The notes beneath the pieces are model-generated. The model made no database searches. It was not told the origin of the DNA and saw only the letters and a list, made by a program, of their open reading frames with translations. Positions 1 through 51,332 of a stretch of DNA of 64,000 nucleotides are shown here, piece by piece (positions within the stretch are counted from its first letter, which is position 1; each line of letters opens with the position of its first letter). The DNA comes from Gracilinanus agilis (lineage: Eukaryota), in the NCBI RefSeq assembly GCF_016433145.1, contig NC_058133.1, positions 478,672,689 through 478,736,688 of the forward strand. The letters are read 5' to 3'. The translations under genes and the position numbers were made by a program.

Positions 1-429
1 TTCATTTTCACCACAATCTTGCAAGGTAGGCAAGGTTGTTTTTTATCCCCATTCTACCCATGAGAGAAATTCGTCTTGAGGTATATGGTGTGAGATGTTG
101 GTCTAAACCAATTGTTAATAGATTGTTTCCTGGTTTTTCCAACAGTTTTGTTGAAGAGAGTCCTTATCTTAGTAGGTGATTTCTTTGAGTTTACCAAAGT
201 TGATACTGCCATGTTTAACTGCTTCTGTATCAGAGTTAAGTGAAAAGAAGGCAGGAAAAGAATTTATACAATGATGGAAATAATATGGAAAGAAGCAATG
301 CTGAGATAATTGAGAATGCTGATCAGCACAATGACTAATCTTGATTTTCAGAAGATTGATGACAAAGCTGACTCCTCACATTTAGCAGAGTTCATAGACT
401 GGAGAAGACTAGAAAAGCTTTATTTTGCT

Positions 430-5880: not shown

Positions 5881-8399
5881 ACAGCAACCAAGACAAAGGA
5901 AATATGCAAAATTGAATTAAAAGGAGAGCTTAGTCGACCATTGTTTTGGAGGCATCTTCAACATGACCTTCATACTTTTTGGATATCATAACTGCCTAGA
6001 GCCTAAGATTACAGATTGAGAGCTATTAGGGATCTAGATGATTTAGCTCAACACCTTCATTTTCTAGCTAAGGAAACTGTGGCCCAGAGAAGTGACTTAT
6101 CCAAGGTTCCACCAGGAGTCAGAAGCAGATCTTGGATATGGTCTCCAGTCTGCAGGCTCTACATCTTTCCACTCCATACAGAGAAAACACCTATGGTCTT
6201 ATGATGAGCCCCGTGGAAATTTCTTGTGGAAATGGTGGTCAGAGCAGGAACAGACAATGAGTATTCCTAGTCTTGGTTCATTCTTTTATCTACCTTCTTA
6301 TATATTACTATTAGGATATATTTGGACAGCTTTTTAAGTCTATTAACATCAATTCGTTTCATCCTCACAATAATCCTGTGAAGTAGGCAAGGGTGGCGTT
6401 CTTATCCACAATTTCTTTATGGGGAAATGAAGATAGAGTGTCAGAGATAAAGCTCTAGACTTGAAGACAAGAAGACCTGGCTGGGTTCCTATCTCTAAAT
6501 TTTACTAGATATGTGATGTTTAGCCTCACAGGCAACACACAAAAGAGGACCTGTAGAAAATTGCTATAAAATTGTCATGTGTTGTTATTATAAAGTGTCT
6601 TGTCCAAGTTTGAAAAACTAGTGAGTAACTGATTCAGCCTCAGACTTTGTGACCTCAGTCAGGGTTATAACTGTGACGAACACTCTCATAGGGAGGAAGC
6701 AGTGAGATTCTCTAATGGGAGTGTGGGTATGAAATAATGGCTAAAATGATTAGGTATTGGTTAATACAACACCCTCATGAATAAATGCCTTTTTTTGAAA
6801 AATGAAAATAAAGTTCACTCCAAATCAATAAAACCAGATGTAGAGAGATGATAAAAATAGCAAATGGCCCTGAATGAATTCAGGAATGGTTGTGACAGGA
6901 AAGACATCTCTTTCTATTTTCTTCCCTTTTGCTTATGACAATACTTTTCATATCTAGTCCTGAGGTCTCATTGAAGGATTTTGTAGTTTGTAGTGTAATA
7001 TGCTGGTCTAAGTCTGATTTCTGCCTAATCACCTTCCAGTTTTTTCAGAACTTTCCATCAAATACAGAATCCTTCCCCACATAGATGATGGTCTTGGGTT
7101 AGCAAAACTCTCTTTTGCTATTGTCAGAAGCTTCTGATTCAGAATGAAGTAAATGAAACCAGAAGAACTGCTGCAATGACTATGATATTATAGATGAAAG
7201 TAACTTTGAACAATTCAAGAATGCTGGTCACTGCAGTGACCAATCATCCCATCAGAAGACCAAAGATAAAGAAAGTTTCTTCTCTTTGATCAGGTAGGTG
7301 ATGGGCTAGAAGCACCAAATAATACAAGTCTTTTTAGTCATGGTCAAGGTTTTGGATTGCCATGTTAATTATATTTAATATGTCATGAAAGGGTTTCTTT
7401 TGGGAAGTGGTAGAAAATGATAGTAATCCAAAAAAGAACAAAAGAGCATGAATGAAAAAAAACACAGAGGAGAACAGAAAGGACAGATTAAGATACCAGA
7501 AATTAGGGGAATTGGCCTACTATTGTGATAAACTTAATAAATATTTTAAAATAAACTATTCAGCTGAAGTTCACAGATTCAGACACCCTCTTCTTTTCTG
7601 TTCTTTGTATTTTATATTCAGATGTGAATATTCATTAGTATTTTAATGTTCAACATAAAAAGAAACATTTTATAGGCTATGAGAGTCATCACAATTTTTT
7701 GGCACAAAAGAAATTAGGAGAGACACTATGGCATAAGTTTGATAATAACTCCCTTATGGCCAGTGTTTTGGTTTGTAAAACTTTTCATGTCTTGGTATAG
7801 ACTTGGACTGTAGTTCTTCTCTGTGGTCAGGGCTTCCTCTCCCTCCCTGGGATGAGAGTCACAAGTCACTCTCCCTCTCTCATCCTCAGTGTCCTGATGT
7901 CTAAATGAGGATACCTAGGACATAGAGAGATGCAAGCATGGGTAGAAACAAAATAAAGGCCAAAGGCACAGAGAGAATGTTTTCAAAGAGAAAGGGAAAA
8001 GGGTTAATGTCATGGCAAACCCTCAAAACATCTTAATCAGACTTCCATTGGAAGGAGCAATGTTGTCTGAACCCTCGGAGAGGGAAGGAAAAGAGAAGGA
8101 AAGAAGGTCTCACTACATTCTCCTGAGCCAAGACCAATGTGGGAGGAAGAAATCAGCCTGGGTTCTGGGATTTTCCCTTAAAAGTAGGAAGCAAAAAAGG
8201 ACTTCTTGTTTCATTGAGTTTCACTGAGAAATGGGATCCCACTCTCATAGCAAGTCAGGCCAGATTTTGTGGGTTTCCTGCCCTTTCTTCTCTTGTATGG
8301 GTCATGTGCTATATTGGGTAGAGGAGGGATGAGATTAAAATCCTGCCTCTGACATTTATAAACAGGATACTCCTGACAAGTCACTCAATCATGTTTGTC

Positions 8400-12040: not shown

Positions 12041-12815
12041 ATAGTTTAATTGTTAAGGATTTTTTCTTAATGTCAGGCCTAAATTAACCTTCCTACAAAT
12101 GCTGCCTACTATCCCATGTTCTATCCTTGGGCCAGTGAGCACAAATCTACATTCTTCCAAAGGAGAGATCTTCTAATACTAAAAGGCAGAAATCCTGTCT
12201 GACCTAGGTCTTCTATTCTCTCTGCTCACCATCTATAGTTTCTTCAACTCAACTCTAGGCACCTCACATCCTTGGCTGCCTTCGTCTTCTCAACAGAGAA
12301 GATGTGATTTTTGGCTTCCCTATCAACCTGTTGGCTCAAAGTGAGATGACAATCCACTGAACCCCCAGGGATTTTACAAAAATTTTGTTGGTTTAATGAT
12401 ACCACACCAATCTAGTATGAACATAACAGAATTCCATCTCCTAAATCCCTCTTCCCCAAGAACACTGAAACAACAGTGAGAAGATATGGTTTTAGAAAGT
12501 TTTATTCTGAAATCTTTGTCCAATAGACATCTGTGGAATCCATCAGGCAACCCCTGGACTCTAAGGAACAGAGGCTAGGTTGCTAATAGAAGTCCCCATA
12601 GGGGAAAAGTATCTTCCAGAAGTGGAATAGTACAAATAAATAAGTAAATCTGCTACCAAATAATTTACATAAGTTAAATATCACAGATAAAAATTAATTA
12701 TAATGGAGGAAAATATCTCAGAAAGGCTGAAGTCTCCAAAATTGTTTCTGACTATGGAATTCCTTAGCTTGGTCCATGTCCCTTGAAGATTCATAAGCCA
12801 AGGGCCCTGAACCCC

Positions 12816-14520: not shown

Positions 14521-15424
14521 AGCAGAGACAGAAGAAATATCTAAAACTGAATTCAAAAGAGTTTTGTTGACCATTAATCTGAAACAGTATTCAACATGAT
14601 CTTCATTCTGCTTTGATATCACAACTACCTAGATTTTAGGGCTGTGGATTGAGAATTAGAAGGCTAGTAGAGGATTTCATTCAATTACCTCATTTTCCAT
14701 CTAAAGAAATTGTGGCTCAGAAAGAAGTTACTTGTCCAGAGTCAGACTGGTAGTCAAAAGCAAATCCTGTATATCGTGTGCTGACTCCACCTCGTTATAC
14801 ACGGAGAACAGTCCATATGGAAGAACCTTCAAGGGCACTCATGGTTAATTTTTATGCAAATAGTGGCCATGGGCAGATCCAAGAAATGAAATCTACTCGT
14901 CTTGGCCTATCCCCATGTCTGCTCTTTTGTGTGACAATATTAATCGCATATAATACTTTAAAGATAAAAAACTTTGACACTTCATATCATTTCATCTTCA
15001 CACCAACATTATGAAGTAGGCAAGTCTGATATTCTTTTCTTTAAATTTTATTCATGAGAAAAATGTTATCAGAAAAGAGAGACTTGACACATAGTAAATA
15101 CAGCTCTAGGCTTGAAGTCGGGAGGATCTGGATTCAAGTCTCATCTCTGAATCTTACCAGCTATATGATCCTTAACCTTACAGTACCCTGAGCCAATATA
15201 GCTAGTAAGTGTCTGATCTAGATTTGCACTCAGGTCTCTCTGACGTCTAGCATCACACTCTATCCACTGTACCACCTAGTCACCCTCTTTGTATACTGAA
15301 ACGTTCATATTTGTTGATATTTAATATCGATATTTGTAGTAAAAAAAAAGAAAAATATATGAAGTGTGAGAGTCCTGGCAATTTTAGAGACACTGACCTA
15401 AGTATGAATATCACTCTTAAGTTA

Positions 15425-15552
15425 AATGGTATATAATATAATATAATATAGTATGGTATAATATAATTTTGTATGGTATAATATAATATAATATAATATA
15501 ATATAATATAATATAATATAATATAATATAATATAATATAATATAATATAAT
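15425..15552. repeat. (AATAT)n microsatellite
   Basis: Directly visible pentamer array. Confidence 0.95.
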
Positions 15553-18067: not shown

Positions 18068-18413
18068 NNNNNNNNNNNNNNNNNNNNNNNNNNNNNNNNN
18101 NNNNNNNNNNNNNNNNNNNNNNNNNNNNNNNNNNNNNNNNNNNNNNNNNNNNNNNNNNNNNNNNNNNNNNNNNNNNNNNNNNNNNNNNNNNNNNNNNNNN
18201 NNNNNNNNNNNNNNNNNNNNNNNNNNNNNNNNNNNNNNNNNNNNNNNNNNNNNNNNNNNNNNNNNNNNNNNNNNNNNNNNNNNNNNNNNNNNNNNNNNNN
18301 NNNNNNNNNNNNNNNNNNNNNNNNNNNNNNNNNNNNNNNNNNNNNNNNNNNNNNNNNNNNNNNNNNNNNNNNNNNNNNNNNNNNNNNNNNNNNNNNNNNN
18401 NNNNNNNNNNNNN
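18068..18413. other. Assembly gap (346 N)
   Basis: N run. Confidence 1.
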
Positions 18414-18735: not shown

Positions 18736-19758
18736 ACAACATAGTCATCTATTCCAAAAAGGTAACTGAAAAAAAAAATCCCCCCTATCACAACCTTTAT
18801 AAATGGTCACCAAGTCTCAGTTTAAAGACCTCCAAGGGAGAGGCAATCATATTCCAGTTTGGACAGGTATAATTATTAAGAATTTTTTCCTATTGTCAAA
18901 TCTAAATTTATATGCTCACAAATTCCACCTCTACCCTTGGTGCTATCCTTGAGTTCCAAAGAGCCCAAATCTATACTATTTCACAGGACATACCATTTAG
19001 AACTTGAGGATTTGAATCATGCCTGACCTGAGTCTTCTCTTCTCCCCACTAATCAATCCCTCTAGTCCCTTCGCTTCATCCTCTTGGGGTTCTAGACACC
19101 TCATGTTCTTGGCTGCCTTCCTCTGAACATTCTCCAGTTTCCCTATATTCTTCTTAAACTGTGGGTACCAGAAATGACCACAATACTTATCAGTTTGGTT
19201 TCCTCAGATAAGAACAGTAGGACTATTGCCCCTTGATTCCAGGAACCTTGCTTCTCCACAGAGAAGATGTCATTTTTGGCTTACCCATCAACCTACTGAC
19301 TCAAAGTGAGATGGAAGCCCACCTAACCCACAGAGCTATTACAGAAACTTTGTTGTCTAATGTTGTCACACCCATCTGGTATGATAACAGCACAACTCCC
19401 ACTTCCCAACCCTCATGCTCAAGAACATTGAAACCACAACAAATAGATATGGTTTTTAAATTTTATTCTGAAATTTTTGTTCATTAGACATTCATTGAAT
19501 ACATCAGGTTACTCAAAGAACTTTAAGAAAGAGAGACTAGGCTGGTAATGGAGGTCCCCATAGGGGACAGATGTCTTCCAGAAGTGCAAATAGTATGAAA
19601 CAATACCCAGAGCTGCCACCAAATAATTTACATTATTTACATAAATTTACATGAATCTTATAGATAAAAAGGAGTTATAATGGGGGAGAAGTCTTATGAC
19701 TGTGGGATTAGTTTGGTCCCTGTCTTTTTAAAGTTCATTGGCTAAGGTCCTGAGCCCC

Positions 19759-21428
19759 TCAGTTCAGCTCCAGTTCCTCCATGTAGGTCTGAACCCAGTC
19801 ATCACTGGGGTTGGCACATACTTGACGGCCTCTTTTGGTCTGGAACCTATAAAGAGAAGAGGGGAGATGAGAGGTCAAGGAGCTTTTCAGCTTGAGGTAG
19901 AAATGTTTCTCTGTGGTTCCCCCCACCCCAACCCAAGTCTAGTTCTGACAACTTCCTGCATACCTCTGGAGAATCTTAAAGGACAATCCTCATCTCTTAA
20001 CATCTCTCAAGTCTTATAAATCAATTATTTTCTCTGGTGACCTATCCAGTAGGAAGTTTGTCAAGAAAACTTGACTTGGTATAAAATTCCTGTGGCTTCA
20101 GTTTTTCTCTCCCCCTTGCATGAGTAGCTCTCATCTTGCTCTATGGAGAACTAAACCTTAGCCAGGAGCCCCCTGTGTGACTTCTTTCCCTTATAACCAG
20201 AGTTACACCTGAGTTGTCTCATTTATCTATTAGACCAAGTTGCAGAATGGCCCCATTTACTCTTTCTTCCTCTCTCCTTATATCCCCTAAAGAGATTCAG
20301 GGAGTAGATAAATACTCACACCACAGCTGGCTGGGAACACAGGCTGCTGGTCTCATAATAGTCTATCACAAATTTTCTGTGGATCTGTTGGCTGACATAG
20401 GAGAAGCAGCAAGAGGTGGGAGGGTCAGAGCCCACTGTAAAGAAAGAGGAGGCATGAGATTAGGAAGGTCATTGTTCCTACCCTCCAGTCCTTAGCTGTT
20501 GCATATCCCAGGAACAAGCTCTGTGTCAGGCACACTGGAGATGTGACCCCTCATGGCTCCCTTATCCTGCTTCCCTCCAGTACCAGGTGGGATTCTCAGT
20601 GTGCCTGGAGAAGGATCAGGCTTGTTGTTCTCATCCCTATTGAGAATATTTGGAAGAAACCTGAAGCATGGGAGCTAGAAAAGATGTCAGAGATCTAGCC
20701 ATCTAATTCCTACTTTTTGTCAAGAAGCCACTTGCTAGAAATTACATGGATATGTTGCGAGAAAGCCTGGATAAGGATTAAATCAGACACTGAACACAGT
20801 CTAATGCCCTTTCTGCTCTCTTCTGCCTTTAGCTTACACCTTAACCAGAATATACTGTCAAGGACATTGTAATGTTTTCTTTTTTTTCTTTCTCTTCTTG
20901 TTTTTTTTTTTTTACTATTTGTTGATTTTATTTTAAGACTTCTATAATTATTTGTTCTTGTCCTTACTCTGAACCAAAGTTCTCTAAGTCCTACCAATTG
21001 CTCCTAGCTTTGCCTTCTGCTGCCAACATATTATATCTAATCCATATACTATATGGCAACTCTTCATGTTAGTCACACACAGACCCAAATCTTCTCTTTT
21101 TCACATTAAACATCCCGACTTCTTTCAACTCATTTTTGTTTGGTATGGCACCCAATCTTCTTTCCATCTTGCATGGTAATGTTTTCAAGTCCAAAAGGCA
21201 TAGAAATTCTTCTTGTTCCTACTCCTCCTTTTCAGTGTTCCTCCCTCCCCAGAAGATCTCTAGGATCAGACTAAGCTTATCTCCTATCAGGGTTCCATAC
21301 AGTTTATGACCAGAGCCTGGGCACAATCACAGAAAATCAGAAAAAGCTCACTTACGTGGTGCAGAAGATGCCAGACTGCTGAAGGCCATGACCATGAGGA
21401 TGGAGAGAGTAGCCACAGAAACCTTCAT
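19759..21428 (-). CDS. CCL4: CCL4-like CC chemokine, copy 3, 91 aa
   Basis: Exons 21356-21428, 20320-20434, 19759-19846. [95 protein letters not shown] 21519-21524, AATAAA 19462-19467. Intron 1 is enlarged by an insertion. Confidence 0.95.
20880..21175 (-). mobile_element. Polyadenylated retro-insertion (old L3/CR1-derived sequence) in intron 1 of copy 3
   Basis: TSD gtaatgttttc at 20869-20879 and 21176-21186 (15 bp with one mismatch). A-rich tail at 20880-20915, AATAAA at 20927-20932. The empty site is visible in copy 4 (aaggacatggtaatgttttcaagtcc, ~32953-32978). Confidence 0.85.
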
Positions 21429-21499
21429 GATTCTGAAAGAAGAGAGATGTTGCAGGAGCAGAGCACAATGTAAGAGACTCTGGATATCTGTGACTGTGC

Positions 21500-21770
21500 C
21501 TCATGCTTGGATTCTGTTTTTATAGGAGTTTGTAGGAATATCCAGCGAGAAAGAAGGAACATGAAAGAGGTGGAAATTCCTGGGTAAAACTGACATCATG
21601 GTAGGAGTAGGAAACTGAAAAGCAAACCCAGGAAATGTAAAGCTGTTAGTAGGGAGTAAAGTTCTCTTCCTCAGCATAATTTCATCATGGGGGGAAATGG
21701 AGGGGAAAGAGAGAGAAATGTGGGGTGGTAAGGGTGCTAAAGGGGAAGTGGTAAATTTGAGCTAGAAGCA
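21500..21770 (-). promoter_or_regulatory. Copy 3 proximal promoter
   Basis: TATA 21519-21524; GGAAATTCC 21572-21580; TGACATCA 21591-21598; ISRE 21611-21620; ETS CAGGAAAT. Confidence 0.72.
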
Positions 21771-22868
21771 GAGACAGATGAAACACATCCAAAACTAAAT
21801 CAGAAGGAGTGTTTTGTTCACCATTGATATGGAGGTGTCTTCAACAATATCGTAACTGCCTAGATCTTAGAATTACAGATTGAGAGCTAGAAAGACCCTT
21901 AGTGTTCTCGCCCAACACTTTAATTTTCTAGCTAAAGAAACTGTGGCCCAAAGAGAACTGACTTGCCCAAGATCGTGTAGTAGTCAGAAGCAGATCTTAG
22001 ATATGGTCCCAGGTCTGCTGACTCCATATATTTATATTTGCTGAGAATAGAACATATGAGGAACCACCTAAGGTCCATTAAGGGGCACTCATGGGCAATG
22101 TGCAAATGGTGGCCATGGGAAGGTCCATGAGATGAGGACTCCTAGATATGGCCCAACCTTATGTCTGCTGTGATGATATTAACAACTTCCATTTATATAA
22201 CATTTTAAGGATAAAGATTTTGATGTTGATAATCTCATTTCATCTTCACATCAATCTTATAAAGAAGGCAACTTTGGTCTTCTCCTCTCTAGTTTATTTA
22301 TGACAAAATGGAGACTTGACATATAGTGAATAGAACCCTAAGCTTGAAACTAGGAAGAACTGGGTTCAAGTCCCATCTCTGAAACTTACTAGCTATGAGA
22401 TCTTCTATCTCACAGTACCACCAGTCAACACTCTAATTAGATGATTTATAGAACAGTTGCTATATAATTACCAGTTATTATTAAATTGCTTATTTAACCT
22501 TTAATAACCAGGAAGTGGCAGATTCAAGATTTGACCTTAGACCATTTGACTTCCGACAGTTTTACAAACTATGAGGCACACACTATGGGAGAGGAGAAAA
22601 CATGAGAGCCTCTCAGGGGGACGTGCATATAAAACAATGACTAGAATTATGGAATATTTTTTTAGTTCACAACCATTACATATGCATCCTTTTTTATCCA
22701 AGAAAAATTAAATTTATGTGAAAGAAGAGAAAAAAATTATTGGGGGGGGAGATAGAGATGTATTTGAATACAATGTTACTATTTAATGGGTTCAGAAGTG
22801 GTGAGGTAGAACAGGAATCTCCTTCAATTTTTCTGGAATTTATGAAATACAATTTTTCTATCCAGATT

Positions 22869-23560
22869 TGGAGTCAGCAGATGTGGGACCAGATAGATCT
22901 GCCTCTGATTACTGGTATGACCTTAGATAAGTTACTTCTCTCTGGATCATAGTGTTTCTTTAAACTCTTGTCTTCTGTCTTAGAATCAATATCAATAATA
23001 ATAATAATAATCAATATTAAGTACTGGTTACATGCCAAAAGAATAGTAAAGGCTATGCAATTGGGGGTAAGTGACTTGCCTAGAGTCACAGAGCTAGGAA
23101 GTGGATGAAGCCTAATTTGAATCCAGGACCTCCCCTCTCTAAGTCTGGCTCTCTATCCACCAGAGCACCTAGCTGCTCTTAGAGCATAGTTTTTTAGATA
23201 TAAAATGAGGGTGTGGATCTATATAAGTTAGGACCTTTGTGGTTCTAAAAGTATAGTCCTAACATCTAAGCGGTTATGATATCAAAATCGCAGTAAGGTC
23301 ATACTGAATACTTCAGATCAATGGTGAACAAACTCTCCTTCCTATTAGTTTTCTACTTGGTTTTTCGGTCTCTGCTACCATCTCAAGTTTACCACTTCCC
23401 CCTCAGTCCCTTTGTCACCCAACTACGCACACATTTCTCCTCTCTCCAGCCACCCTCTTCTTTTCTCCATGATGAACCTGCCTGAAGAAGAGAACCTCAG
23501 CCCTAGACACCAGCCTTACATTTCCTGGGTTCATTTTCAGTTTCCAACTCCCACCCTGAC
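22869..23560 (+). repeat. Inverted duplicate of the CCL4 upstream promoter region (interrupted by a SINE)
   Basis: Reverse-complement similarity to 21596-22026, e.g. tggagtcagcagatgtgggacc vs ggtcccaggtctgctgactcca, and catttcctgggttcattttcagtttccaactcc. Confidence 0.85.
22960..23180 (-). mobile_element. SINE1_Mdo-like SINE inside the inverted promoter copy
   Basis: Characteristic body; absent from the paralog at 36201-36660. Confidence 0.7.
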
Positions 23561-24229
23561 CCATGGAACACCCTGTGGTACATGGTGTGAGATTTTGGTC
23601 TATGCTTGATTTCTGTCTGACATTTTCAATGTTTCTAATAGTTTTGGTCATATACAGAATGCTGACCCAAGTGGGTGATGCCTTTGGGTTTACTAAACAC
23701 TGCACTGCTATGTTCACATGCTTCTATTTCTGAAAGAAATGAACAAAACCTGGAGAAGAACCAGTAAGTGGCTAAAAGTATTGTCAATGAAAAAAAAATT
23801 CAAACCAGGCTAGAATGCTGATCACTACAATAAGTAATCATTCTATCCAAAAACTGATGTGAAAGCATGCTTCTCACCTTTTCAAGGGCAGGTGATAGAC
23901 TACAGTTGACAAATGAGGCAATATTTTGCTTTGTTTTGCTTGGTTATACACAATTTGTTATATAGGAGAATTTCTTTGGGGCAACTGATAGCAATGTAGA
24001 AAAAAAGGAGGGATAAAGAAAAATACATCAATGAAAAATTGAGGGGGGAAAAGAATACAAAAGAGCAAAAAAAAATTCTAGAAAGGGACCCAAACAAGCT
24101 AGGAACTTTATTTACCATTATCAAAAACTTAATGTATAACTAAAAATACCAAACTATATTCAGTAAATGTTTACAAATTCATACACCTTTTTTCTGTTCT
24201 TTATGTATTCTCTGTTGTTCATTCATGTT

Positions 24230-24810
24230 GTTGTGGGGCAGGGATTGAGGTGAACCATTGGGGTTTGAGATGGGTACCCTTTGCAAGAATGCAAGACTCC
24301 ATAACTTAGCTTAGAAATAAAAAGAGAAATTTATTCATTGAAAGGTCATGTTGAATTTGACTGGGAGGATAGCATAGATGGGATGCTACCTCCTAGAGGG
24401 GATATGTTCTGGGTCTTTTATACTCTTACAAAAACAGGGATAATAATGTGACTGAAAATGGAATGAGGTAGGGCAGGAGTGGGGGGATTTTTGTTATCTG
24501 ACAGGGGGTGAGCCTCATAGTCTAGGGGGTAAGTAGATGTCTTAGATACAACCAGATGGAATCAAAGCATAATCTGGAGGTATATCTCTGTATCCATCTT
24601 GGAATCTAGGGGAGAATTCAAGGAGAATCTTTCTCTCAGGGGTCTTTCCTTATCATAAGTCTTTGATGTCCAGGTAAACCCTTTCCTCAACAGTAACAAG
24701 AACACAAGGAAGGAAAGGAATTTTCCTGCTTCCAGTCTGACCTGAAGCACTTTTATAATTTGGGGAGGACAAAGAGAAACCCAGAGGCCCATGCCAATGT
24801 CAGGCATGCA
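24230..24810 (-). mobile_element. Probable solo ERV LTR
   Basis: Minus-strand TATAAAAG 24415-24422, hairpin ~24363-24392, AATAAA 24330-24335. Interrupts a sequence that is contiguous in paralogous units. TSD not resolved. Confidence 0.5.
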
Positions 24811-24814
24811 TGGC

Positions 24815-25015
24815 CCTATTTGGTGTTTTCTTGGCAGAGATACTAGAGTATTGCCATTTTCTTCTCCAGCTCATTTTACAGACTAGAAAATTCAGGTAAA
24901 CAGGGTTAAATAATTTGCCTAGGGTCACATAGCTAGTAAGTATCTGAGATCAGATTTGAACTCAAGTCTTTCTGACTTCAGATATGGTGCTCTATCTACT
25001 ATACCATCTAGCCAC
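24815..25015 (-). mobile_element. MAR1-like SINE
   Basis: tttggtgttttcttggcagagatactagagtattgccattttcttctccagc. Confidence 0.65.
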
Positions 25016-25600
25016 CCTCTTTGTCTATCAAAATGTTTATATTTGTTGATATTTTGATGTTCATAATAAAAAGAAAAAACGTATAATGTGTGAGATAGCA
25101 ATTTTGGAGATACTATGACAAAAATTTGGATATGACTCTCTTATGGTCAATGGCTTCCTTTGTAGAACCCAAACTTGTCTTAATATAGGTTTAGACTGTG
25201 GTTCTTCTCTGTGGCCAGGGCTTCCTCTTCCTTCCTGTGTTGAGTCATAGGGTCTTTCTCCTTCTTTCATCCTCAGTGTCCTGATATTTAAACTAATACA
25301 CATGGAATATAGAGAGATCCAAGGGAATATGGGGAACCAATGTAGACAGAAACCACACAGACTATGTCCCCCAAAAGTCAGAGAATTAATAGTGCAATGC
25401 TATAGGAAAACCACAGAAACCTCTTAATCAGACCTTCATTGGAACTGTGGGACACTGGGAAAGGAAGGGAAAGGAGACAGAAAGGAGGTCTCACTACATT
25501 CTCCTGAGTCAAGAAGGAAGAGGAAAGAGGAGAACAGATTGGGATCTAGGATTCTCCCTTTGCAGTAGGAAGCAAAGGACTTGCTTCTCCCTTAAGTTTC

Positions 25601-28046
25601 TTTTTTTTTTTAATCTTACAACAGGCCATATTTTTACTCTCATGCAGCTGGCTAAAAGGTTCAGAGAATCCTGCTATGCTTAAAGTATATATTGAATTAA
25701 TTAATTTGGAGGAAATCAACAAATTATAGAATCCATTTCTCTACCTCTTCATTTGCCACAAATGATATAAAAGCCGCATTTAGTTAAGTCTTTTGCAAGT
25801 ATTCATTATAAGCTCTGCCATAAAGATTGGCCAAGCAAGCATCCCATAAAATTTTTCTTGTTGCCATTGGACAATGAATCCAATTCATTTGCTTATAAGC
25901 CTTAGCTGTGGCTTCCTATCGTTCACTAGTTTCATTCAGAGCAACAATATGAAGAAGAACATGACTTGGGTCATCCATTTAGCATGTCAAAGTGTTCAAT
26001 GGATGATAATCTCATGTTTAAAGTACCAACAGTTGTTTGTAGATGGTGTTTCTTTGCCTCTTCTTCCCCCTTCCAAACTGAGGGATTTTAATGGGTTGTC
26101 ATAGGTAAATAATATAATAGCCTCCTCCTAGGGATGAGCCTCCATGCACTCACTTCAGTTGGTCTTCCAAAGAAAGCTTCTCTCTAGGGCTGTACCAAAG
26201 AACCTGCCACAGCTTGTTCTGCAGGAGCGGCTTTCAAAAACTTAGGGTCACTTCCACACCACTGAACTTGTGGACAGCTCATGAATTAATGTATTATAAA
26301 TGTAAGCTTTTGTAAAGCATTTAATTATTGATAAGATACTAAATCTTCACTGCTCTAGTTGTTTCTGAGTGTTCTGGCCTCCGGGTTACCCTGACAGAGC
26401 AATGAATTCATAAAATGAAAAGAATTAGGAGTAGGTGCATTGTCTTTTGTCCCATGAGGCTTCTTCTTTGTAGCAGGGATGAATCTATACATCTTAACTT
26501 TCTTAACATCCTTAGCTTATACCTCATGACATGGTCTGCAAACCAGGAAAAAAGAGAAAAAAGAAAAAAAGCTAATTGGTCACTTTTGATTTTCATCCTT
26601 TCAATTATCTTTTAAGTCAGACTTGATATAAGGAACAAAAAAAAGTATGAATTTAATTTTAACTAACCTTTTATTCTCCCTAATTATCCGTTCATTTGGA
26701 CTGGCCTTAAGACTGTCTTTTTTTCACTGGAGTCTTTAAGAGGTCAGAAAAACACTGACAAAATGAAGACAAATAACATGCTACTTCTGAGAGGATTTCA
26801 CTGTATTCAGCAGTAGTCAGTTTTACAAGCTTTTTTTTTACCATTCCAAAATGAAAAAAAGTCATATAAAAATATAAAAGAGTCTCATCTTTCTTTTCTC
26901 TAGAAATTGGGCCCAATTATCAATAAAAGTATTTAAACTTCAAATTAACCCCCAATCAAAAAATCCAATGTGTAGAACTGGGTCTTTTTAATAGCCAATG
27001 TGCAATATAATAAATAGAATTTACTTAAAAAACAGTAGACCTCATTTATAAATGTTATGCTCTGTGGTGGTTCACCATAGTAATAGACCTATTGCGATTT
27101 TCTTGATATGTTGTAGAATCTTTAATAATTAGCAAAAATGTAGAAATCCATTCAATCAGTCACTCAAACAAGCAAGAGAGCATTTATGCATCCATCATTT
27201 TCTGGATCATTGGTAACCTGTGCATATTTTTCCCTGATGACTTTGCCTCCTTGTATCACAAGGCCCAGCTCACTCATTTTCACCTCAATGGCAGTACCTT
27301 TGGTAATGAAACCCAAAGTTGTATATAGTGGGGACAAGGGATTCTTCTTCACATCATGTATGGGTAGACAAAAAGTGGCTTTAAGTTCAGGGTGAGTTAC
27401 ATGAGCCTTATTAAAGCACAAACTCATTGGTCTAATAAATCTTTCATATTTTGATGGTTTTCAAGGAAAACCATCCCCAACAAAGCAGACTTTAGTAGCC
27501 ATTCTCTTCCAAGTCTTCTTCTTCCTCCTTCCTGTACAAATAACCTTTAACACTTCTGCTTCTCCCTGGGCATGAACCTTTGGCAAAGGCACTTCCCATT
27601 TACCAGCTTTCTCTTTTCATTTTTATTTAGTCATGTTGGAAAGGACTTTGGCTCAGAACTGTCCATCTCTGTCCAGAAGATATGCAGGCACTGCTCCTTG
27701 GGGAGTTTTTCATCGTTTTTTCGCTTGGTATTTCTCTTTTCATGCATCTTGATGCTTTTTTTTCATTTGCATCTTCTCAGCATGACATTGTTTGGGGAAA
27801 GTTTGGCCTTTAGACTTATCATTTTCGTTGCTTTCTTTGACATTTGTGAGCTTCATGGCTTCCTTTCTTTCTCTTTTTCTCATGGTAATCCAAGTGGTAG
27901 CCATTCTGCTTTCGGTGTAATTCTATATATTTGTTCTGTGGCATGACAACGGCTCTGTGCCAGTCAAGAGGCCGCTGAAATTGCTCCCAAAATTAAGACC
28001 CTCCAATGAGAGCAAATGAATCCCCACGAGCCGGAAAAGAAAAGGG
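25601..28046 (-). pseudogene. NSA2: NSA2 processed pseudogene: 5'UTR, intronless disabled CDS 27164-27944, ~1.55 kb 3'UTR, poly(A)
   Basis: Starts [27 protein letters not shown] and ends [16 protein letters not shown]...[21 protein letters not shown]. No introns, several frameshifts. Poly(A) as T-run 25601-25611. 14-bp TSD ctcccttaagtttc at 25587-25600 and 28047-28060. Confidence 0.96.
25780..26290 (-). mobile_element. RTE-clade LINE 5' fragment (APE endonuclease N-terminus) inside the NSA2 retrocopy 3'UTR
   Basis: Degenerate TVGTLNMR and IVALNETSER.EATAK motifs on the minus strand. Confidence 0.55.
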
Positions 28047-30139
28047 CTCCCTTAAGTTTCAATCATAAATGTCCATGGCAATTCTGCTCAGATCCTATGA
28101 ATTTCCTGCCCTTTTCCCTTCTAGCAGAGATAGTGTGTTGTAGTGAACTTATAATCAAGGAGGCTGAGATTTAAATTCTGCCTTTGAGACTTAACAACAA
28201 ACAGTGTTCCTGAGGAGGTCATTCACTCATTCTTATCCTTTAAGCACTGTTAATTTCCTTCCGTAATCCCTTAAATTCTCCGAGTTTTACTGAACTTTTT
28301 CATTTAAAATTCATTTTTCATTTAAAAATCTTAGTTCCAAGGGATAAAGACAAGAGCCATTCAGAAACGAAGGGAATGAACTATCCTTCAACAACAATAG
28401 AATTAAACTGCAAAGGGAGATTGAGAAAAGTGCAGGCACATACATGTTCTGGACTTCTCTTTGTATGTCTGGGGCCATTTTGAGAGCCTCTCAACTCTTA
28501 GGGATATGAAAGCATTCACCCTCATTCACTGTCGTACCTTTCCAGTCTGGTAAAGCAGACAGCATGGTAGTATGGAAATCATGGACTAGTTTTTGAATCA
28601 TACCTTGGACACTTCCTAACTGTATGGCCATAACTGATCTCTCAGAGTCTGTTTCCTTATCCATCAAATGGGGATAATAATACTCCCTCTCCCTGCTTCA
28701 CATAGGTAGTTGAGAGAAAAGTGCTTTGAAGACTTGTAAAACCCTTCAAAAACATTTTAGGAACAGGATTTCCGGACCACAGGATCAAGAATTTGGAGCT
28801 AGAAGGAACCTTAGAGGACATCAAGTCCACTAAGGTGACTAAGTTTCCTCACAAAGTCTTTCAAATGTCCCTTGGGATTTTATCTCCCCAACAACCCTTG
28901 GCAGCAGGCAGTACAGGGAAAATGATAATACTAGCCAGGACCACTACCCACTAATAAAAAAGGACACATATTAACTATTAATCAGCAGTCATTGCCTCAC
29001 TAAAGCCCTTGACAGTTTAAAAACATATTCTTTTGCCCTGGTATCTCATGTAAGCCTAGAAAGGTTGAATGAATTGCCCAAGATCACACATGCATGGCAG
29101 AGTCTAAATGGAAGTGCCAAGGAAGACTGGATTAGTTCAGGAATTTACACATACAGTAGTTCAGGGTCCTCACCACAATCCTGAGAGGTGGTATAACAGC
29201 AGGTAATGTCATACCCATAGGACAAATGAGGAACTTGAATCACAAAGAAATGACGGGGCTTTGACCAAAGCTTTCCTCCTAGGTTTCCTGTCTTCTGGGG
29301 CAGAAAGTGCTATCACCACATTAGAGTTGGGAAAAACTAAAGTATAGCTATTCATGATTAGTCCAAGGCCATTCAGCCAGAGCTTCAGACAGCTCAGAGG
29401 GAACTAAAGGGACAGTGGGGAATAGGAGGCAGAGGGACGTGAAGGGAGTCAACTGAGGCAAGTTGGGTATCCCAGTTGAGAATGTAGAGCAGAAGACCAA
29501 CAGGTGGAAGTGACCTCTGCATCTTGTGGGAGGAACAGCAAAGAGGCCAGTGTCTCTGGATGATAGAATGCGTGGAGGCAGCAAAGTGTTAGAAAACTGG
29601 GAAGGTAGGAAGGAGACAGGGTTTCAAAAAGAGGATTTTATATTTTATCCTAGAGGTAATAGGGAGCCACTGGAATTTACTGAGTAGGAGCATCAGGAAG
29701 GTCATGTTGACAGCTGACTGAAGGATGGAGTGGAAAGGGGAGAATGTGAGGAAAGGAGATCAGCTAAGAGGACATCATTATGTTAAGTGATAAAGGATGA
29801 AGATGAATCTTCTTACTCTGCAACTTAACTTTACAAAGATAGAAACAATGAAAACAAATGAGTTAACAATTTTGTAAAATTCTAAAACTAGAAAGTGTCT
29901 GAATTAGGACAAGAATTTGAATCTTGCCACTTGAAGTCTGTATCGGTCAGTTTACTATAGGTTTCTCCTTCACTGAAAAACATGATTTTACTATTCTGGT
30001 TAAATATACTGAATCCATCTAGATATTTTGAGTAAGTGACTTGCTCATGGTTATACCAGTAATGTCAGGATTTGAACTTGGCCACTGATGTAAAATTGAG
30101 CATTTTCTTTCCTGCCAAACCTTTTTTAAGTTAATTTTC

Positions 30140-30830: not shown

Positions 30831-31844
30831 CATTTATACCTAAAGGTAACTGAAAAAAATTCCCCATTATCACATCCTTTGTTTAAAGACCTCCAAGGGA
30901 AAGGGAACTAACTACAACTTGAGACAACCCATTCCAGTTTGGGCAGGCATAATTGTTAAGAATGTTTTCCTAATGTTGAGTCTAAATTTAGATCTTCACA
31001 AATTTCACCTCTTGGATCTATCCTTGGACCCCAGAGAGCACAAATCGACACTATTTCATAGGACAAATCTTCCAGTACTTGGAGAAAAGAATCATACTTG
31101 ACCTAGGTCTTCTTTTCTCCCCACTAGCCACCCTTAGTTCCTTCACCTCATCTTCTAGTGACTCTAGATACCTAATGTTCTTGGATGCTTTCCTCTTCCA
31201 GCTTCCCAATAGTCTTCTTAAACTGTGGATAACAAAATGACTACCATACTACCATTTGGTCTTTTTAGACCTGAAGAATAGGACTGTTGCCTCTCTTTTA
31301 CTAGAAGCTTGCTTCTCAACACAGGAAAACATTTCATTTTTGGCTTACCCATTGCCCTGCTGATTCAAAGTGAGATGGCAGTCCAGCTAACCCACAGAGC
31401 TATTATAGAAACTTGGTTGTCTAATACTGCCACACCCATCTGATTTAAAAATAGAACTCCAACTCCCCCAACACCTCATCTCCAAAGAACATGGAAAACA
31501 GAGTAAAAATATATGATTTTAAAACTTTTTTTTATTTTGGAATCTTTGTCCATTAGACATTCATAGAATCCAGTAGGCAACCCAAAGGATTCTAAGGAAA
31601 AGAGAATAGGCTGGTAATGAGGGTCCCCACTAGGGACAAATGTCTTCCAGAAGTGCAAATAGTGCAATCAAATACCCAAAGCTGCTACAAAATAATTTAA
31701 ATGAACTAAATATCACAGATAAAAAGGAATTATAATGGGGAGAAGATCTCAGGAAAGCTGGAGTCACAGAGATTAAATCTGACTGCAGAATTTCTTAGCT
31801 TGGTCTGTGTTCCATGAGGATTAATTGGCAAGGTCCTGAGCCTC

Positions 31845-33216
31845 TCAGTTCAGCTCCAGTTCCTCCATATAGGTCTGAACCCAGGCATCACTGGGGTTGG
31901 CACACAACTGACGGCCTCTCTTGGTCTGGAACCTGTGAAGGATGAAGGGAGAAGATAAGAGGCCAAGGATCTTTTCAGCTGTAGGTAGAGATGTTTCTTT
32001 ATGTCCCTTTATACCCCATGTCTAGCACTGAAAACTTCTTGCATACCTCTGGAGGACCTTAATGGACAATCCTCATCTCTAACAACATCTCTCAAGTCTT
32101 ATAACTCAATTAGGTTTTCTCTAAAGACCTATCTGGTAGGAAGTTTGTCAAGAAAACTTGACTTGGTTTTAAATTCCTGTAGCTTCAGTTTTCCTCTTCC
32201 CCTTGCATGAGTAGTTTTCACCTTGCTCCACGGAGAACTAAACCTTGGCCAGGGGCCCCCTGTGTGATTTCTTTCCCTTATTATCAGGGTCTCACCTGAG
32301 TTGTCTCATTTATCTATTAGACCAAGTTGCAGAATGGTCCCATTTACTCTTTCTTCCTCTCTCCTTATATCCCCTAAAGAGATTCAGGGTACAGTAGATA
32401 GATACTCACACCACAGCTGGCTGGGAACACAGGCTGCTGGTCTCATAATAGTCTGTCACAAATTTTCTGTGGATCTGTTGGCTGACATAGGAGAAGCAGC
32501 AAGAGGTGGGAGGGTCAGAGCCCACTGTAAAGAAAGAGGAGGCATGAGATTAGGAAGGTCATTGTTCCTACCCTCCAGTCCTTAGCTGTTGCACATCCCA
32601 GGGACAAGCTCTGTGTCAGGCACACTGGAGATGTGACCCCTCATGACTCCTTTATCCTGCTTCCCTCCAGTACCAGGTGGGATTCTCAGTATGCCTGGAG
32701 AAGGATCAGGCTTGTTGTTCTCATCCCTATTGAGAATATTTGGAAGAAACCTGAAGCATAGGAGCTAGAAGAGATGTCAGAGATCTAGCCATCTAATTCC
32801 TACTTTCTGTCAAGAAGCCACTTGCTAGAAATCTCATGGGTATTTAGCAGCTGAGCCAGAATAGGAACTTAGGCAGACACAGAACTCAGGCTACTGTCCT
32901 TTCTTCTCTCATCTCCTGCTTTGATTTTAAATGAAAACAAACATATACTATCAAGGACATGGTAATGTTTTCAAGTCCAAAAGGTGTAGAAACCTTTATG
33001 TTCCTGCTCATCCCTTTCAGTTCTCTCCCTCCCCAATCACAACAGATCCCTGTGATCAGACTAGGTTATCTCCTATAAGGACTCTGTCCGACTAAGATCA
33101 AAGGCTGGGCACAGTCACAGAGGGCAGGAGAGAGCTTACTTACTTGGTACAGAAGATGCCAGAGAGCTGAAGGCCATGACCATGAGGATGGAGAGGGCAG
33201 CCACAGAGACCTTCAT
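31845..33216 (-). CDS. CCL4: CCL4-like CC chemokine, copy 4, 91 aa
   Basis: Exons 33144-33216, 32410-32524, 31845-31932. [95 protein letters not shown] 33307-33312, AATAAA 31531-31536. Confidence 0.95.
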
Positions 33217-33289
33217 GATCCTGAGAGGAGAGAGGTATCAGAGGAGCAGAGAACAAACTAAGAGACCCTGCAGATCTGTGTCTCTGTCT

Positions 33290-33560
33290 CACACCTGGAC
33301 CCTTTCTTTATAGGGGTTTCTAGGAGTACCCAGAAAGAAAGAAGGAACATTAAAGGTATGGAAATTCCAGGGTAGAGCTGATGTCATGATGACAGTAGAA
33401 AACTGTAAAGTGAACCCAGAAAACGTAAGGCTGGTTGACAAGGGCTGAGGTTCTCTTTCTCAGGGCAATTTCATCATGGGAGAAAGGCGGGGAGAGATAA
33501 AGGAGAAATGCAGAATGGCAAAGGTGCTAAGGGGGAAGTGGTAAACTTGAGTTAGAAGAG
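33290..33560 (-). promoter_or_regulatory. Copy 4 proximal promoter
   Basis: TATA 33307-33312; GGAAATTCC 33360-33368; TGATGTCA 33379-33386; ISRE altered (AAAACTGTAA); ETS altered (CAGAAAAC). Confidence 0.72.
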
Positions 33561-34204
33561 ACACATGAAACAGATGCAAAACTAAGTCAAAATGAGGATT
33601 TTGTTGATCATTGACATGGAGGAATATTCAGCCTGACCTTCAGATTGCTTTTTTTTATATATATATCTTAACTGATCTTGGGTTTGTAAATTGAGAGTTA
33701 GAAGGGTCCAAGGTAGTTTAAGTTCAATAAACTCATTTTCCAGCTCAAAAAACTGTGGCCCATAGAGAAGTGACTTGTCCAAAACTACACAGGTAGTCCA
33801 AAGCTGATCCTGAATATGGTCCCAGGTCTGCTGACTCTATGTCTCTCTTTTTTTTTTAAACCCTAACCTTCTGTCTTAAAATCAATATTATGTATACTGT
33901 ATGGGGTTAGGCAATGGAGGGTCGATCTGCCCAGGGTCACACAGCTAAGAAGTGTTTGAGGCCAGATTTAAACCTAGGACCTGTTCTGCTCCTCTAACAA
34001 CTCTCTCCTTTCAGGATCATGAAAGTTTATCCAAGTTTTAATAACCAAGAAGTGACTGGTTCAGGATTCAAGTCTCTAGACCTGGTTTTCAATCCACCTA
34101 GATGCCTTCACTACATCTTTAGACTCATGGAGAATAGTACCTATGGAAGAACCACCAATGATCCTTCAAGGGCTCTCATGGACAATTTTTTGTACAAATG
34201 GTGG

Positions 34205-35258: not shown

Positions 35259-35275
35259 AAGGATACAAAAGGTTT

Positions 35276-35480: not shown

Positions 35481-36200
35481 CTAAGGATATGAAAGATTTT
35501 GACATATATTCTCTCATTTTATATTTGCATCAACCTCAAGAAGTAAATAGTTTTGTTATTTCCAGTTTATTTATGATGAAATGGAGGCTTGCAGTATAGT
35601 GGAAAGAGCCCTAGGTTTGAAGTAAAAAAGATCTGGGTTCAAGGCTCATATCTGAAAATTACTAATTCTCATAGAATCTGCAGTCAATATTCTATTCAGA
35701 TGATTTGTAATACAGTTGCCATATTATTATCATTATACCAGTTATTCTTTATTAAAACTTTTTAATTAAACTTTTTAAATTAAAAAACCAATACTATATT
35801 TTGGTTCCAAGGCAGAAGAGTTATACCAATTATTATTAAGTGGCTTATCTACATTTTAATAACCAAGTCACAGACTTCAGGATTCAACCTGAGGTCTTGA
35901 CTTCAGGCAGAGTTTTACAAATTATGGAGGGAGCAAACCCTCATGGGAGAGGAGTCAACATGAGAGCCTGTGGGGAGGAGTGTAGATATGAAACAACTAG
36001 AATTATGGGACATTTTTAAGGACCAACTATCACAAATACAACCATTCTTTTGAAGGAAAATGAATGTCAAAGAAGAGAAAACAAGATATGGAGGGAAGAT
36101 GGAGATATATATGAATACAATGTTACTATTTAAAGGGTTAGGACAGTTATATCCACTGTTTTCCCTGCAATTTGTGAGATATAATTTTCCTCTATAAATT

Positions 36201-36660
36201 TGGAATCAGCAGATGTGACCAGATCCAGGATCTGCCTCCAACTATTGGTGTAACTTGGACAAGTTACTTCTCTCTGGGTCAGTTTCTTTAGTTGTAAAAT
36301 GATGGTGTTTGATTAAATAACTAAGGGCCATTCTAGTTCAAAATCTACAGTTCTACAGTCTAGACAATTATCCTGTCAAAGCTGTTTGAGGATCATGTTG
36401 ACTATTTCTCTGAATTGATAATCAGCATAACTCTTTCCTATTTGTTTTTGTATTTGTTTCATCTACTCTATCTCTGATGCTATTTCAAGTTCACCACTTT
36501 CCCCTCTTCCCCCTTGTCACTACACATACATTTCTCCTCTCTCTATCCAGCCTCCTCTTTTCTCCACAATGAAACTGTACTAGGGAAGAAAACCTCAGCC
36601 CTCAATACCAGCCTTCCATTTCGGGGCTCATTTTTCAGTTTCCAACTCCTACCATGACAC
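36201..36660 (+). repeat. Inverted duplicate of the CCL4 upstream promoter region
   Basis: Reverse-complement similarity to 33384-33840; paralogous to 22869-23560 with the same breakpoint at ccatgac. Confidence 0.85.
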
Positions 36661-51240: not shown

Positions 51241-51251
51241 TGGGTTTTGTT

Positions 51252-51256
<5 letters not shown>

Positions 51257-51326
<70 letters not shown>
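51257..51326. repeat. (TG)n microsatellite
   Basis: Directly visible. Confidence 0.95.

Positions 51327-51332
<6 letters not shown>

What the first reader, a model, noticed from the sequence alone, without database searches (positions are those of the whole stretch)
22869..23560. Inverted copy of the CCL4 promoter ~1.5-2 kb upstream of copy 3: shadow enhancer or relic of a lost head-to-head gene
Seen: reverse-complement copy of 21596-22026 containing the PU.1-like site, ETS (catttcctgg 23519-23528) and an intact ISRE (TTTCAGTTTC 23535-23544). It breaks at the CRE, so it lacks kB, TATA and any exon. The homologous position in unit 1 (~6950-6970) joins the two flanks without it. Established: enhancer motifs work in either orientation. 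Inference: duplicated promoter-proximal motifs may act as an enhancer or drive a divergent non-coding RNA, or mark a deleted plus-strand chemokine. It also forms a long inverted repeat that could favour rearrangement.
Basis: partly seen in the sequence, partly recalled or inferred. Interest (0 to 1): 0.7.

Follow-up and report, generated by a model that had tools for sequence, protein, structure and literature searches.

The report
Inverted partial copy of CCL4 promoter
About 1.4-2.1 kb upstream of one opossum CCL4-like chemokine gene lies an old back-to-front copy of part of that gene's own promoter; it looks like a scar of DNA repair or replication rather than the remains of a lost gene, and there is only weak evidence that it still regulates anything.

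Summary
Window 22867-23560 is a reverse-complement copy of the distal promoter of CCL4-like copy 3 (21596-22036). Identity is about 71% and the BLAST E-value is 1e-29. The copy stops inside the CRE and lacks the kB site, the TATA box and all exons.

- The same arm, with the same breakpoint and flank, sits upstream of copy 4 (36198-36659), so it predates the split of units 3 and 4.
- Arm 3 is split by a later 220-bp SINE (22963-23182).
- The inner third of the copied segment is itself an old SINE fragment.
- Units 0 and 1 both have a clean empty site.

No chemokine exon relic lies downstream of either arm, and the arms do not resemble the CCL3-like promoter. The lost head-to-head gene reading is therefore unlikely. 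The best fit is a fold-back or template-switch inverted micro-duplication with an 830-bp spacer.

The arms as a whole diverge like their surroundings (K2P 0.34 against 0.32-0.42). The outer 190 bp, which carries the motifs, is better kept (82% against 67%), but this is only suggestive (scan p = 0.11). Arm 4 has lost its ETS site. The longest perfect arm-to-source match is 16 nt, so present-day rearrangement risk is negligible.

No read data or cross-species data could be obtained.

The parts
21596..22036 (-). Source segment: distal promoter of CCL4-like copy 3, running from inside the CRE upstream. Its distal ~190 nt is an old MIR-type SINE fragment.
   Evidence: for the alignment. One search shows weak hits (E 1e-5) of the distal part to dispersed SINE copies in the window. 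The MIR core was recognised from my own knowledge.
21426..21598 (-). Core and proximal promoter of copy 3 that was NOT copied: CRE tgacatca 21591-21598, kB ggaaattcc 21572-21580, TATA 21518-21524, ATG 21428-21426.
   Evidence: Sequence. The exon 1 ORF ([16 protein letters not shown]...) is. Exon 2 matches CCL4 (1hum, E 3e-18) and Pfam IL8.
22037..22866 (.). Non-duplicated spacer (830 bp) between the source and the inverted arm. It is homologous to unit 1 6181-6957, unit 2 14828-15196 and unit 4 35482-36197.
22867..22962 (+). Arm 3, inner part (SINE-derived portion of the copied segment).
   Evidence: The left junction is at 22866/22867.
22963..23182 (-). Later SINE insertion that splits arm 3. 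It is absent from arm 4 and flanked by a ~16-nt target-site duplication (22946-22962 / 23183-23198).
   Evidence: Many copies of this repeat occur in the window. The alignment gap against arm 4 and the promoters is. The duplication was read.
23183..23560 (+). Arm 3, outer part. It carries the PU.1-like site 23392-23401, CCATGATGAACC 23467-23478, GAAGAAGAGAAC 23484-23495, the ETS site 23519-23528 and the ISRE/EICE-like TTTTCAGTTTCC 23534-23545. It ends inside the CRE (TGAC, 23557-23560).
23368..23560 (+). Best-kept block of the arm. Arm 3 vs arm 4 identity is 82.4% here against 67.4% for the inner half.
23561..24216 (.). Right flank. It is shared with unit 4 (36660-37345), unit 1 (6958-7618) and unit 0 (56-429), and contains no chemokine exon.
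36198..36659 (+). Arm 4: the same inverted promoter copy upstream of CCL4-like copy 4, with the same breakpoint and flank. Its ETS site is destroyed (CATTT-CGGGG), its PU.1 core is altered (CTTTCC) and its ISRE is intact.
6957..6958 (.). Empty site in unit 1: the left and right flanks abut with no arm between them.
55..56 (.). Empty site in unit 0 (approximate): the flank ACCCATGAG... follows sequence that is not arm-like.

Best explanation
The feature is an old local inverted micro-duplication. About 470 bp of the distal CCL4-like promoter, from inside the CRE upstream, was copied in reverse and inserted about 830 bp further upstream. This happened in the ancestor of array units 2-4, after that lineage had separated from units 0 and 1. 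The layout is source, single-copy spacer, inverted copy, then resumption of the original flank. That is the layout expected when a broken or stalled 3' end folds back on its own strand, primes synthesis for a few hundred bases, and is then rejoined to the other end (fold-back or template-switch repair). The arm was inherited by units 3 and 4. In unit 2 it was removed by a larger deletion. It never had a gene attached. Since then it has mostly drifted: it was hit by a SINE in unit 3 and lost its ETS site in unit 4. At most there is weak residual constraint on the outer ETS/IRF motif block. Shown here: the structure, its presence in two units, the empty sites, the absence of exons and the divergence figures. 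Inferred: the repair mechanism, the direction of the event (insertion rather than precise deletion) and the lack of function.
For: The arm aligns end to end with all five promoters and stops at one shared point inside the CRE in both units. Arm 4 at 36198-36659 has a homologous spacer and flank. Units 0 and 1 have clean empty sites. No target-site duplication flanks the arm, and the only copies in the window are the five promoters and the two arms, so it is not a transposon. No exon relic lies in the intergenic regions, and there is no similarity to the CCL3-like promoter. K2P between units 3 and 4 is 0.344 for the arm, 0.315 for the spacer, 0.349 for the distal promoter and 0.40-0.42 for the flank. 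Relative-rate tests of arm against resident promoter are not significant over the whole segment. Arm-to-promoter distances (0.35-0.47) fall between the unit 3/4 distance (0.32-0.41) and the unit 1 vs 3/4 distance (0.50-0.58). Unit 2 is as close to unit 3 as unit 4 is, and lacks the equivalent of 22428-24929. In human fold-back inverted duplications, spacers of 766 bp and more are the rule (PMC3907307). Replicative template switching can produce inverted inserted segments (PMC9199198).
Against: The promoter tree places both arms outside a P1-P4 clade with 91/91 support. Taken at face value this makes the arm older than the unit 1 split and would require a precise loss in units 0 and 1. I attribute it to gene conversion among the direct-repeat promoters: P1-P3 K2P is 0.32 while the adjacent spacer is 0.54. 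That attribution is an inference. The outer 190 bp of the arm is the best-conserved 193-column stretch of the 2-kb alignment between units 3 and 4 (80.8%), and arm 3 keeps three of its four ETS/IRF-type motifs. Both points fit some retained function. Microhomology at the junctions cannot be established after this much divergence. Fold-back events described in the literature are large chromosomal rearrangements, not 0.5-kb insertions.
Confidence: 0.6

Rival explanations
1. The arm is a working promoter-derived enhancer (a redundant or shadow copy of the ETS/PU.1-IRF module) that boosts induction of copies 3 and 4 in myeloid cells. It acts independently of orientation and needs no core promoter of its own.
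For: Arm 3 keeps the PU.1-like, ETS and ISRE/EICE-like sites, and both arms keep TTTTCAGTTTCCAACTCC exactly. In the outer block arm 3 vs arm 4 is 82.4% identical, the highest of all 21 pairs in that block, against 67.4% in the inner half (p = 0.0004) and against spacer plus far flank (OR 1.6, p = 0.013). The best window of the 2-kb alignment is 23369-23566. The arm has persisted in two units.
Against: The scan-corrected p is 0.11. SINE-derived 100-nt windows reach the same 0.78 identity. The link between promoter-invariant columns and arm identity (OR ~2) is matched in the SINE part and in an intron control (OR 1.6-2.1 and 1.7). Arm 4 has lost the ETS site and altered two other sites, and arm 3 has lost the GGAA core of the second site. 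Whole-arm divergence equals that of its neighbours. The conserved plateau runs on into a flank that is also conserved in units lacking the arm. No chromatin or RNA data are available.
Confidence: 0.25
2. The arm is ancestral to the whole array, older than the unit 1 split, and was precisely lost from units 0 and 1 by slippage between weak direct repeats. This is the same structure with a different history.
For: The tree places the arms outside P1-P4 with 91/91 support. The left flank end and the arm's outer end are weakly similar (about 11-12 of 19-21 nt), so a deletion between them would leave what is seen in unit 1.
Against: It needs an exact excision of one arm. Arm-to-promoter distances (0.35-0.47) are smaller than the neutral distances between unit 1 and units 3/4 (0.50-0.58). 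The promoters show signs of conversion: P1-P3 is 0.32 against 0.54 in the adjacent spacer, and the P1-P3 relative-rate result is asymmetric. That makes the tree an unreliable guide.
Confidence: 0.12
3. The arm is the promoter relic of a plus-strand chemokine gene (a head-to-head partner, CCL4- or CCL3-like) whose kB site, TATA box and exons were later deleted.
For: CCL4 copy 5 and the CCL3-like gene are head-to-head in this window. From my own knowledge, the same arrangement holds in humans, where CCL3L/CCL4L duplicate as pairs.
Against: The flank past the arm is contiguous with the left flank in units 0 and 1. No exon relic was found at E below about 0.01. The arm clusters with the CCL4-type promoters and has no significant match to the CCL3-like upstream region. 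The breakpoint is identical in units 3 and 4.
Confidence: 0.04
4. The two arms are independent insertions of a transposable element that also contributed the promoter segment, or they are an assembly artefact.
For: The inner third of the copied segment is SINE-derived.
Against: The non-SINE 300 nt is copied contiguously with the SINE part and with the same internal junction. No target-site duplication is present and there are no other copies in the window. Two copies 73% identical to each other, with homologous flanks, cannot be a misassembly.
Confidence: 0.02

Closest known systems
Fold-back inverted duplications with a single-copy spacer (Hermetz et al. 2014, PMC3907307)
   Same: The order is the same: source, non-duplicated spacer, inverted copy. 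The 830-bp spacer lies within the reported range (766 bp to 70 kb) and within typical resection lengths. Short inverted homology is possible at the inner junction.
   Different: The reported events are megabase-scale, pass through a dicentric chromosome and end in terminal deletions. Here only about 0.47 kb was copied and the original flank resumes, so synthesis must have stopped and the end been rejoined locally.
Replicative template switching (FoSTeS/MMBIR) with inserted inverted segments (review PMC9199198)
   Same: A short inverted segment copied from nearby sequence has been inserted at a junction, and a 5-11 nt overlap is possible at the outer junction (23550-23560).
   Different: Microhomology cannot be verified after roughly 0.35-0.4 substitutions per site. 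No accompanying copy-number junction was identified at the arm itself.
Shadow or redundant enhancers, and promoters acting as enhancers (Epromoters); own knowledge
   Same: A second copy of the gene's own ETS/IRF motif cluster lies within 2 kb of the promoter. Enhancers work in either orientation.
   Different: There is no evidence of activity. Motifs are partly decayed in arm 4, and conservation is only marginally above background.
Human CCL3-CCL4 head-to-head pair and the CCL3L/CCL4L segmental duplications (own knowledge); marsupial CCL4-family expansions (PMC4662006)
   Same: The gene family and cluster are the same. The array is tandemly expanded, and a head-to-head CCL4/CCL3 pair sits at the array's end (copy 5 and the gene at 60885-62569).
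   Different: The arm is not a second gene of a pair. It is a promoter fragment with no core promoter and no exons.

Membership tests
Local inverted duplication by fold-back or template switching | Inverted copy of adjacent sequence, separated from its source by a non-duplicated spacer | tested here: met
   Source 21596-22036, spacer 22037-22866, arm 22867-23560. The spacer is single-copy within the unit.
Local inverted duplication by fold-back or template switching | Paralogous or orthologous empty site showing that the flanks were once contiguous | tested here: met
   Unit 1 at 6957/6958 and unit 0 at about 55/56.
Local inverted duplication by fold-back or template switching | Microhomology at the breakpoints | tested here: inconclusive
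   Positions 23550-23560 fit both the promoter (CCACCATGAC) and the unit 0/1 flank. The inner junction shows 6 of 10 matches beyond the arm. The sequences are too diverged to judge.
Transposable element insertion | Target-site duplication and multiple dispersed copies | tested here: not met
   No duplication flanks 22867-23560. Within the window only the five promoters and two arms match the non-SINE part. A genome-wide count could not be made.
Transcriptional enhancer (shadow or promoter-derived) | Cluster of binding motifs for the relevant factors | tested here: met
   Arm 3 has the PU.1-like, ETS and ISRE/EICE-like sites intact. Arm 4 keeps only the ISRE fully intact. Motif names rest on consensus knowledge, not on binding data.
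Transcriptional enhancer (shadow or promoter-derived) | Sequence constraint above the neutral background | tested here: inconclusive
   Whole-arm K2P is 0.344 against 0.315-0.417 for neighbours. The outer block is 82% identical against 67-75% elsewhere, with nominal p = 0.013 and scan p = 0.11. Controls show a similar site-level effect.
Transcriptional enhancer (shadow or promoter-derived) | Open chromatin, factor occupancy, eRNA and reporter activity | not testable with these tools
No epigenomic data are on hand.
Divergent promoter or pseudogene relic of a head-to-head chemokine gene | Core promoter (TATA or Inr, with kB and CRE) at the end of the arm | tested here: not met
   Homology stops inside the CRE. 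The flank has no TATA conserved between units 3 and 4: GGTACATGG against GGTATATGG.
Divergent promoter or pseudogene relic of a head-to-head chemokine gene | Exon remnants downstream on the plus strand | tested here: not met
   tblastn with exon 2 and exon 3 of copy 3 and exon 2 of the CCL3-like gene against 22040-28050 and 33850-42140 gave only noise hits, with E of about 0.1 or worse. The exon 1 query was cut in the wrong frame and is not informative.
Recombinogenic long inverted repeat | Long, near-identical arms with a short spacer | tested here: not met
   The arms are 71% identical, the longest exact run is 16 nt, the spacer is 830 bp, and a 220-bp SINE sits in one arm.

The most novel reading that the evidence does not exclude
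A regulatory module was born by a local inverted duplication of promoter-proximal sequence. On this reading the outer ~190-270 bp (23368-23640, and 36471-36720 in unit 4) is a conserved ETS/PU.1-IRF enhancer serving CCL4-like copies 3 and 4. Its redundancy with the resident distal promoter would have relaxed constraint on the latter: P3 and P4 share a 13-14 nt deletion and diverge at the neutral rate, while the arms stay closer to P1.
Probability: 0.2. Interest if true: 0.55.

Novelty: new member of a known kind. Interest (0 to 1): 0.25.

Why it matters
If the arm is only a scar, it is a clean, datable example of a small fold-back-type inverted duplication. It is fixed inside an expanding immune gene array and comes with paralogous empty sites. 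That makes it useful for reconstructing how the marsupial CCL4 array grew, and it shows that such palindrome-like structures can persist for tens of millions of years. If the outer block is active, it would be a worked example of enhancer origin by duplication of a gene's own promoter motifs, and of regulatory differences between near-identical chemokine paralogues. In either case the reading that a gene was lost here can be set aside.

Tried and rejected
Nothing can be said here about transcription or chromatin.
- Cross-species comparison: no tool here holds marsupial genomes.
- Promoter-invariant columns predicting arm 3 = arm 4: nominally significant (80% vs 68%, p = 0.007). I rejected it as evidence of selection because the same odds ratio appears in the SINE-derived part and in intron 2, and mild gamma rate variation predicts 77% vs 65%. 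The intron 1 control was unusable because copy 3 aligns poorly there.
- CpG decay as the cause of rate differences: rejected. The whole region is CpG-depleted, with observed/expected of about 0.1.
- Recent gene conversion from the adjacent promoter into the arm: rejected. Arm 3 vs P3 is 76% in the proximal block, no higher than against the other promoters.
- CCL3-type origin of the arm: rejected.
- Literature searches for the CCL4 promoter architecture found no open paper describing the elements. The motif names (CRE, kB, PU.1, ETS, ISRE/EICE) therefore rest on consensus knowledge.
- The N runs (18068-18413, 41640-41828, 52288-52478) were left untouched.

Full report
CONTEXT. The window holds five CCL4-like genes on the minus strand. 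Their exon 2 CC motifs are at 4826, 13466, 20411, 32501 and 43781. One CCL3-like gene lies on the plus strand, with exon 2 at about 61553. Exon 2 of copy 3 matches human CCL4 best (1hum, E 3e-18, against CCL3 at 5e-13), and exons 2 and 3 match Pfam IL8. Earlier notes of this scan call the genome an opossum. Copy 3 has its ATG at 21428-21426, TATA at 21518-21524, a kB-like ggaaattcc at 21572-21580 and the CRE tgacatca at 21591-21598.

The repeat finder gives four collinear inverted pairs linking 21596-22036 to 22859-23559, at 75-82% identity. BLAST gives E 1e-29 for 21596-21834 against 23559-23311, and the arm also matches the other four promoters in inverted orientation (E 1e-27 to 1e-51). In 7-way alignments the arm follows the promoters column by column from GGAGTCAGCAGA to ...CCACCATGAC and then departs inside the CRE. 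Unit 1 joins the two flanks without the arm: 6114-6957 matches 21979-22865, 6982-7618 matches 23574-24216, and local alignment puts the two flanks in direct contact at 6957/6958. Unit 0, at the window's start, also runs from non-arm sequence straight into the flank.

- The same arm lies upstream of copy 4, at 36198-36659. It has the same breakpoint, and its spacer (35482-36197) and flank (36660-37345) are homologous to those of unit 3. The event is therefore older than the split of units 3 and 4.
- Arm 3 is interrupted by a 220-bp SINE (22963-23182) with a decayed target-site duplication of about 16 nt. Arm 4 lacks this SINE.
- The inner ~190 nt of the copied segment is an old MIR-type SINE fragment that all five promoters share. 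I recognise the core from my own knowledge. The tool support is weak but significant hits to dispersed SINE copies in the window (E 1e-5). The remaining ~300 nt is not SINE sequence and was copied contiguously with the SINE part.

ORIGIN. The arm has no target-site duplication, and the window holds no copies beyond the promoters and the two arms. The flank beyond the arm is the sequence that abuts the left flank in units 0 and 1. This is what a templated insertion of about 470 bp looks like.

The order is source, 830-bp single-copy spacer, inverted copy, original flank. That order fits a 3' end at about 22866 folding back, priming at about 22036 and copying leftward to about 21596, followed by rejoining at about 23561. 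Sequenced human fold-back duplications always show such a spacer, 766 bp or longer (PMC3907307). Replicative template switching is likewise known to insert inverted segments (PMC9199198).

The mechanism is inferred. A possible overlap of 5-11 nt at 23550-23560 and partial matches at the inner junction cannot be judged after this much divergence.

TIMING. Intergenic K2P distances are as follows:
- Unit 1 vs units 3/4: 0.50-0.58 in spacer and flank.
- Unit 3 vs unit 4: 0.32-0.42.
- Unit 2 vs unit 3: 0.26-0.30.
- Arm to promoters: 0.35-0.47.
- Arm 3 to arm 4: 0.344.

These figures place the insertion after units 0 and 1 branched off and before units 2-4 radiated. Unit 2 lacks the equivalent of 22428-24929, a deletion that would have removed its arm.

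Two further points bear on the history. P3 and P4 share a 13-14 nt deletion that the arms, P1, P2 and P5 all lack. The promoter tree is close to a star and places the arms outside P1-P4 with 91/91 support. I put this down to conversion among the direct-repeat promoters. P1-P3 is 0.32 while the neighbouring spacer is 0.54, and the relative-rate result for P1-P3 in the inner block is asymmetric. Because that is an inference, I keep the alternative history (arm ancestral to the array, precisely lost in units 0 and 1) at about 0.12.

NOT A LOST GENE. tblastn with the window's own exon 2 and exon 3 peptides and the CCL3-like exon 2 found only noise in 22040-28050, 33850-42140, 6170-12280 and 45080-60500. 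The exon 1 query was cut in the wrong frame and does not count. The CCL3-like gene has its own CRE, kB-like site and TATA upstream of its ATG at 60885, but no significant similarity to the non-SINE part of the arms. A lost gene would also require a deletion that ended exactly at the old insertion boundary.

FUNCTION.
As a whole, the arm has diverged between units 3 and 4 like its surroundings. K2P is 0.344 for the arm, 0.315 for the spacer, 0.349 for the resident distal promoter and 0.40-0.42 for the flank. Arm and resident promoter evolve at indistinguishable rates over the whole segment.

Promoter-invariant columns are better kept between the arms (80% vs 68%, p = 0.007). However, the same odds ratio of about 2 appears in the SINE-derived part and in an intron control, so this is not evidence of selection. 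The region is uniformly CpG-poor, which rules out CpG decay as the cause.

The one positive signal is regional. The outer 190 bp (23368-23560, from the PU.1-like site to the ISRE-like site) is 82.4% identical between the arms. That is the highest of all 21 pairs in that block, against 67.4% for the inner half (p = 0.0004). It is also the best 193-column window of the 2-kb alignment between units 3 and 4. Against this:
- The scan-corrected p is 0.11.
- SINE-derived 100-nt windows reach similar identity.
- The plateau continues about 75 nt into a flank that is also well kept in units without the arm.

At motif level, arm 3 keeps three of four ETS/IRF-type sites and arm 4 keeps about two. Only TTTTCAGTTTCC is intact in both arms. 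The real promoters P2 and P4 have themselves lost sites. My reading is mostly drift, with weak constraint on the outer block possible (0.2-0.25).

REARRANGEMENT RISK. Arm and source are 71% identical. The longest exact run is 16 nt, the spacer is 830 bp and a SINE sits in one arm. From my own knowledge, this is far below what homologous recombination or cruciform extrusion needs. The repeat has also survived in two units.

No marsupial genomes can be searched here. Motif names rest on consensus knowledge, because the literature searches found no open description of the CCL4 promoter elements. PMC4662006 reports CCL4-related expansions in marsupials. The N runs were left alone.

VERDICT. It is an ordinary kind of structural relic in an interesting place. 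The lost-gene reading is disfavoured and the enhancer reading remains open but weak.

Noticed in passing
window 53652-54530: A 440-bp segment is tandemly duplicated at 98.9% identity (53652-54089 / 54091-54530) in the CCL4-CCL3 intergenic region. It is far younger than anything else in the array.
   Followed up: no
window 19251-25600 vs 31312-37994: Divergence between units 3 and 4 rises stepwise away from the gene. K2P is 0.16 in the gene body, 0.20 downstream, 0.26 in the proximal promoter and 0.32-0.42 upstream. This suggests gene conversion or later homogenisation confined to the transcribed parts of copies 2-4.
   Followed up: partly
window 21690-21710 (P3) and 33480-33500 (P4), approximate: P3 and P4 share a 13-14 nt deletion in the CA/CT-rich tract of the distal promoter. 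P1, P2, P5 and both inverted arms lack it.
   Followed up: partly
window 23575-23640; also 36672-36740, 6985-7050 and 75-140: The flank next to the insertion site (GGTAYATGGTGTGAGAT..TGGTCTAAGCTTGATTTCTG, then ACAGAATGCTGACCCA) is unusually well kept in four units, including the two that lack the arm. Its nature is unknown.
   Followed up: no
window 45218-45785: Two SINE copies lie head to head and form a 570-bp self-complementary stretch just upstream of copy 5's promoter.
   Followed up: no
window 60690-60890: The CCL3-like gene has the same proximal layout as the CCL4 copies: CATCATGACATCA (CRE), AAAATTTCC (kB-like) and CTATAAAAAG (TATA) upstream of its ATG at 60885. There is no alignable similarity further upstream.
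   Followed up: partly
window 20440-21340 (intron 1 of copy 3): Intron 1 of copy 3 aligns poorly with the other four copies (52-68% against 69-82% among the others). It includes an A-rich stretch around 20713-21003, so there has probably been an insertion or rearrangement inside the intron.
   Followed up: no
window 14828-15429 vs 22078-25153: Unit 2 lacks the equivalent of 22428-24929, about 2.5 kb. The junction lies between two SINE fragments in opposite orientation.
   Followed up: partly
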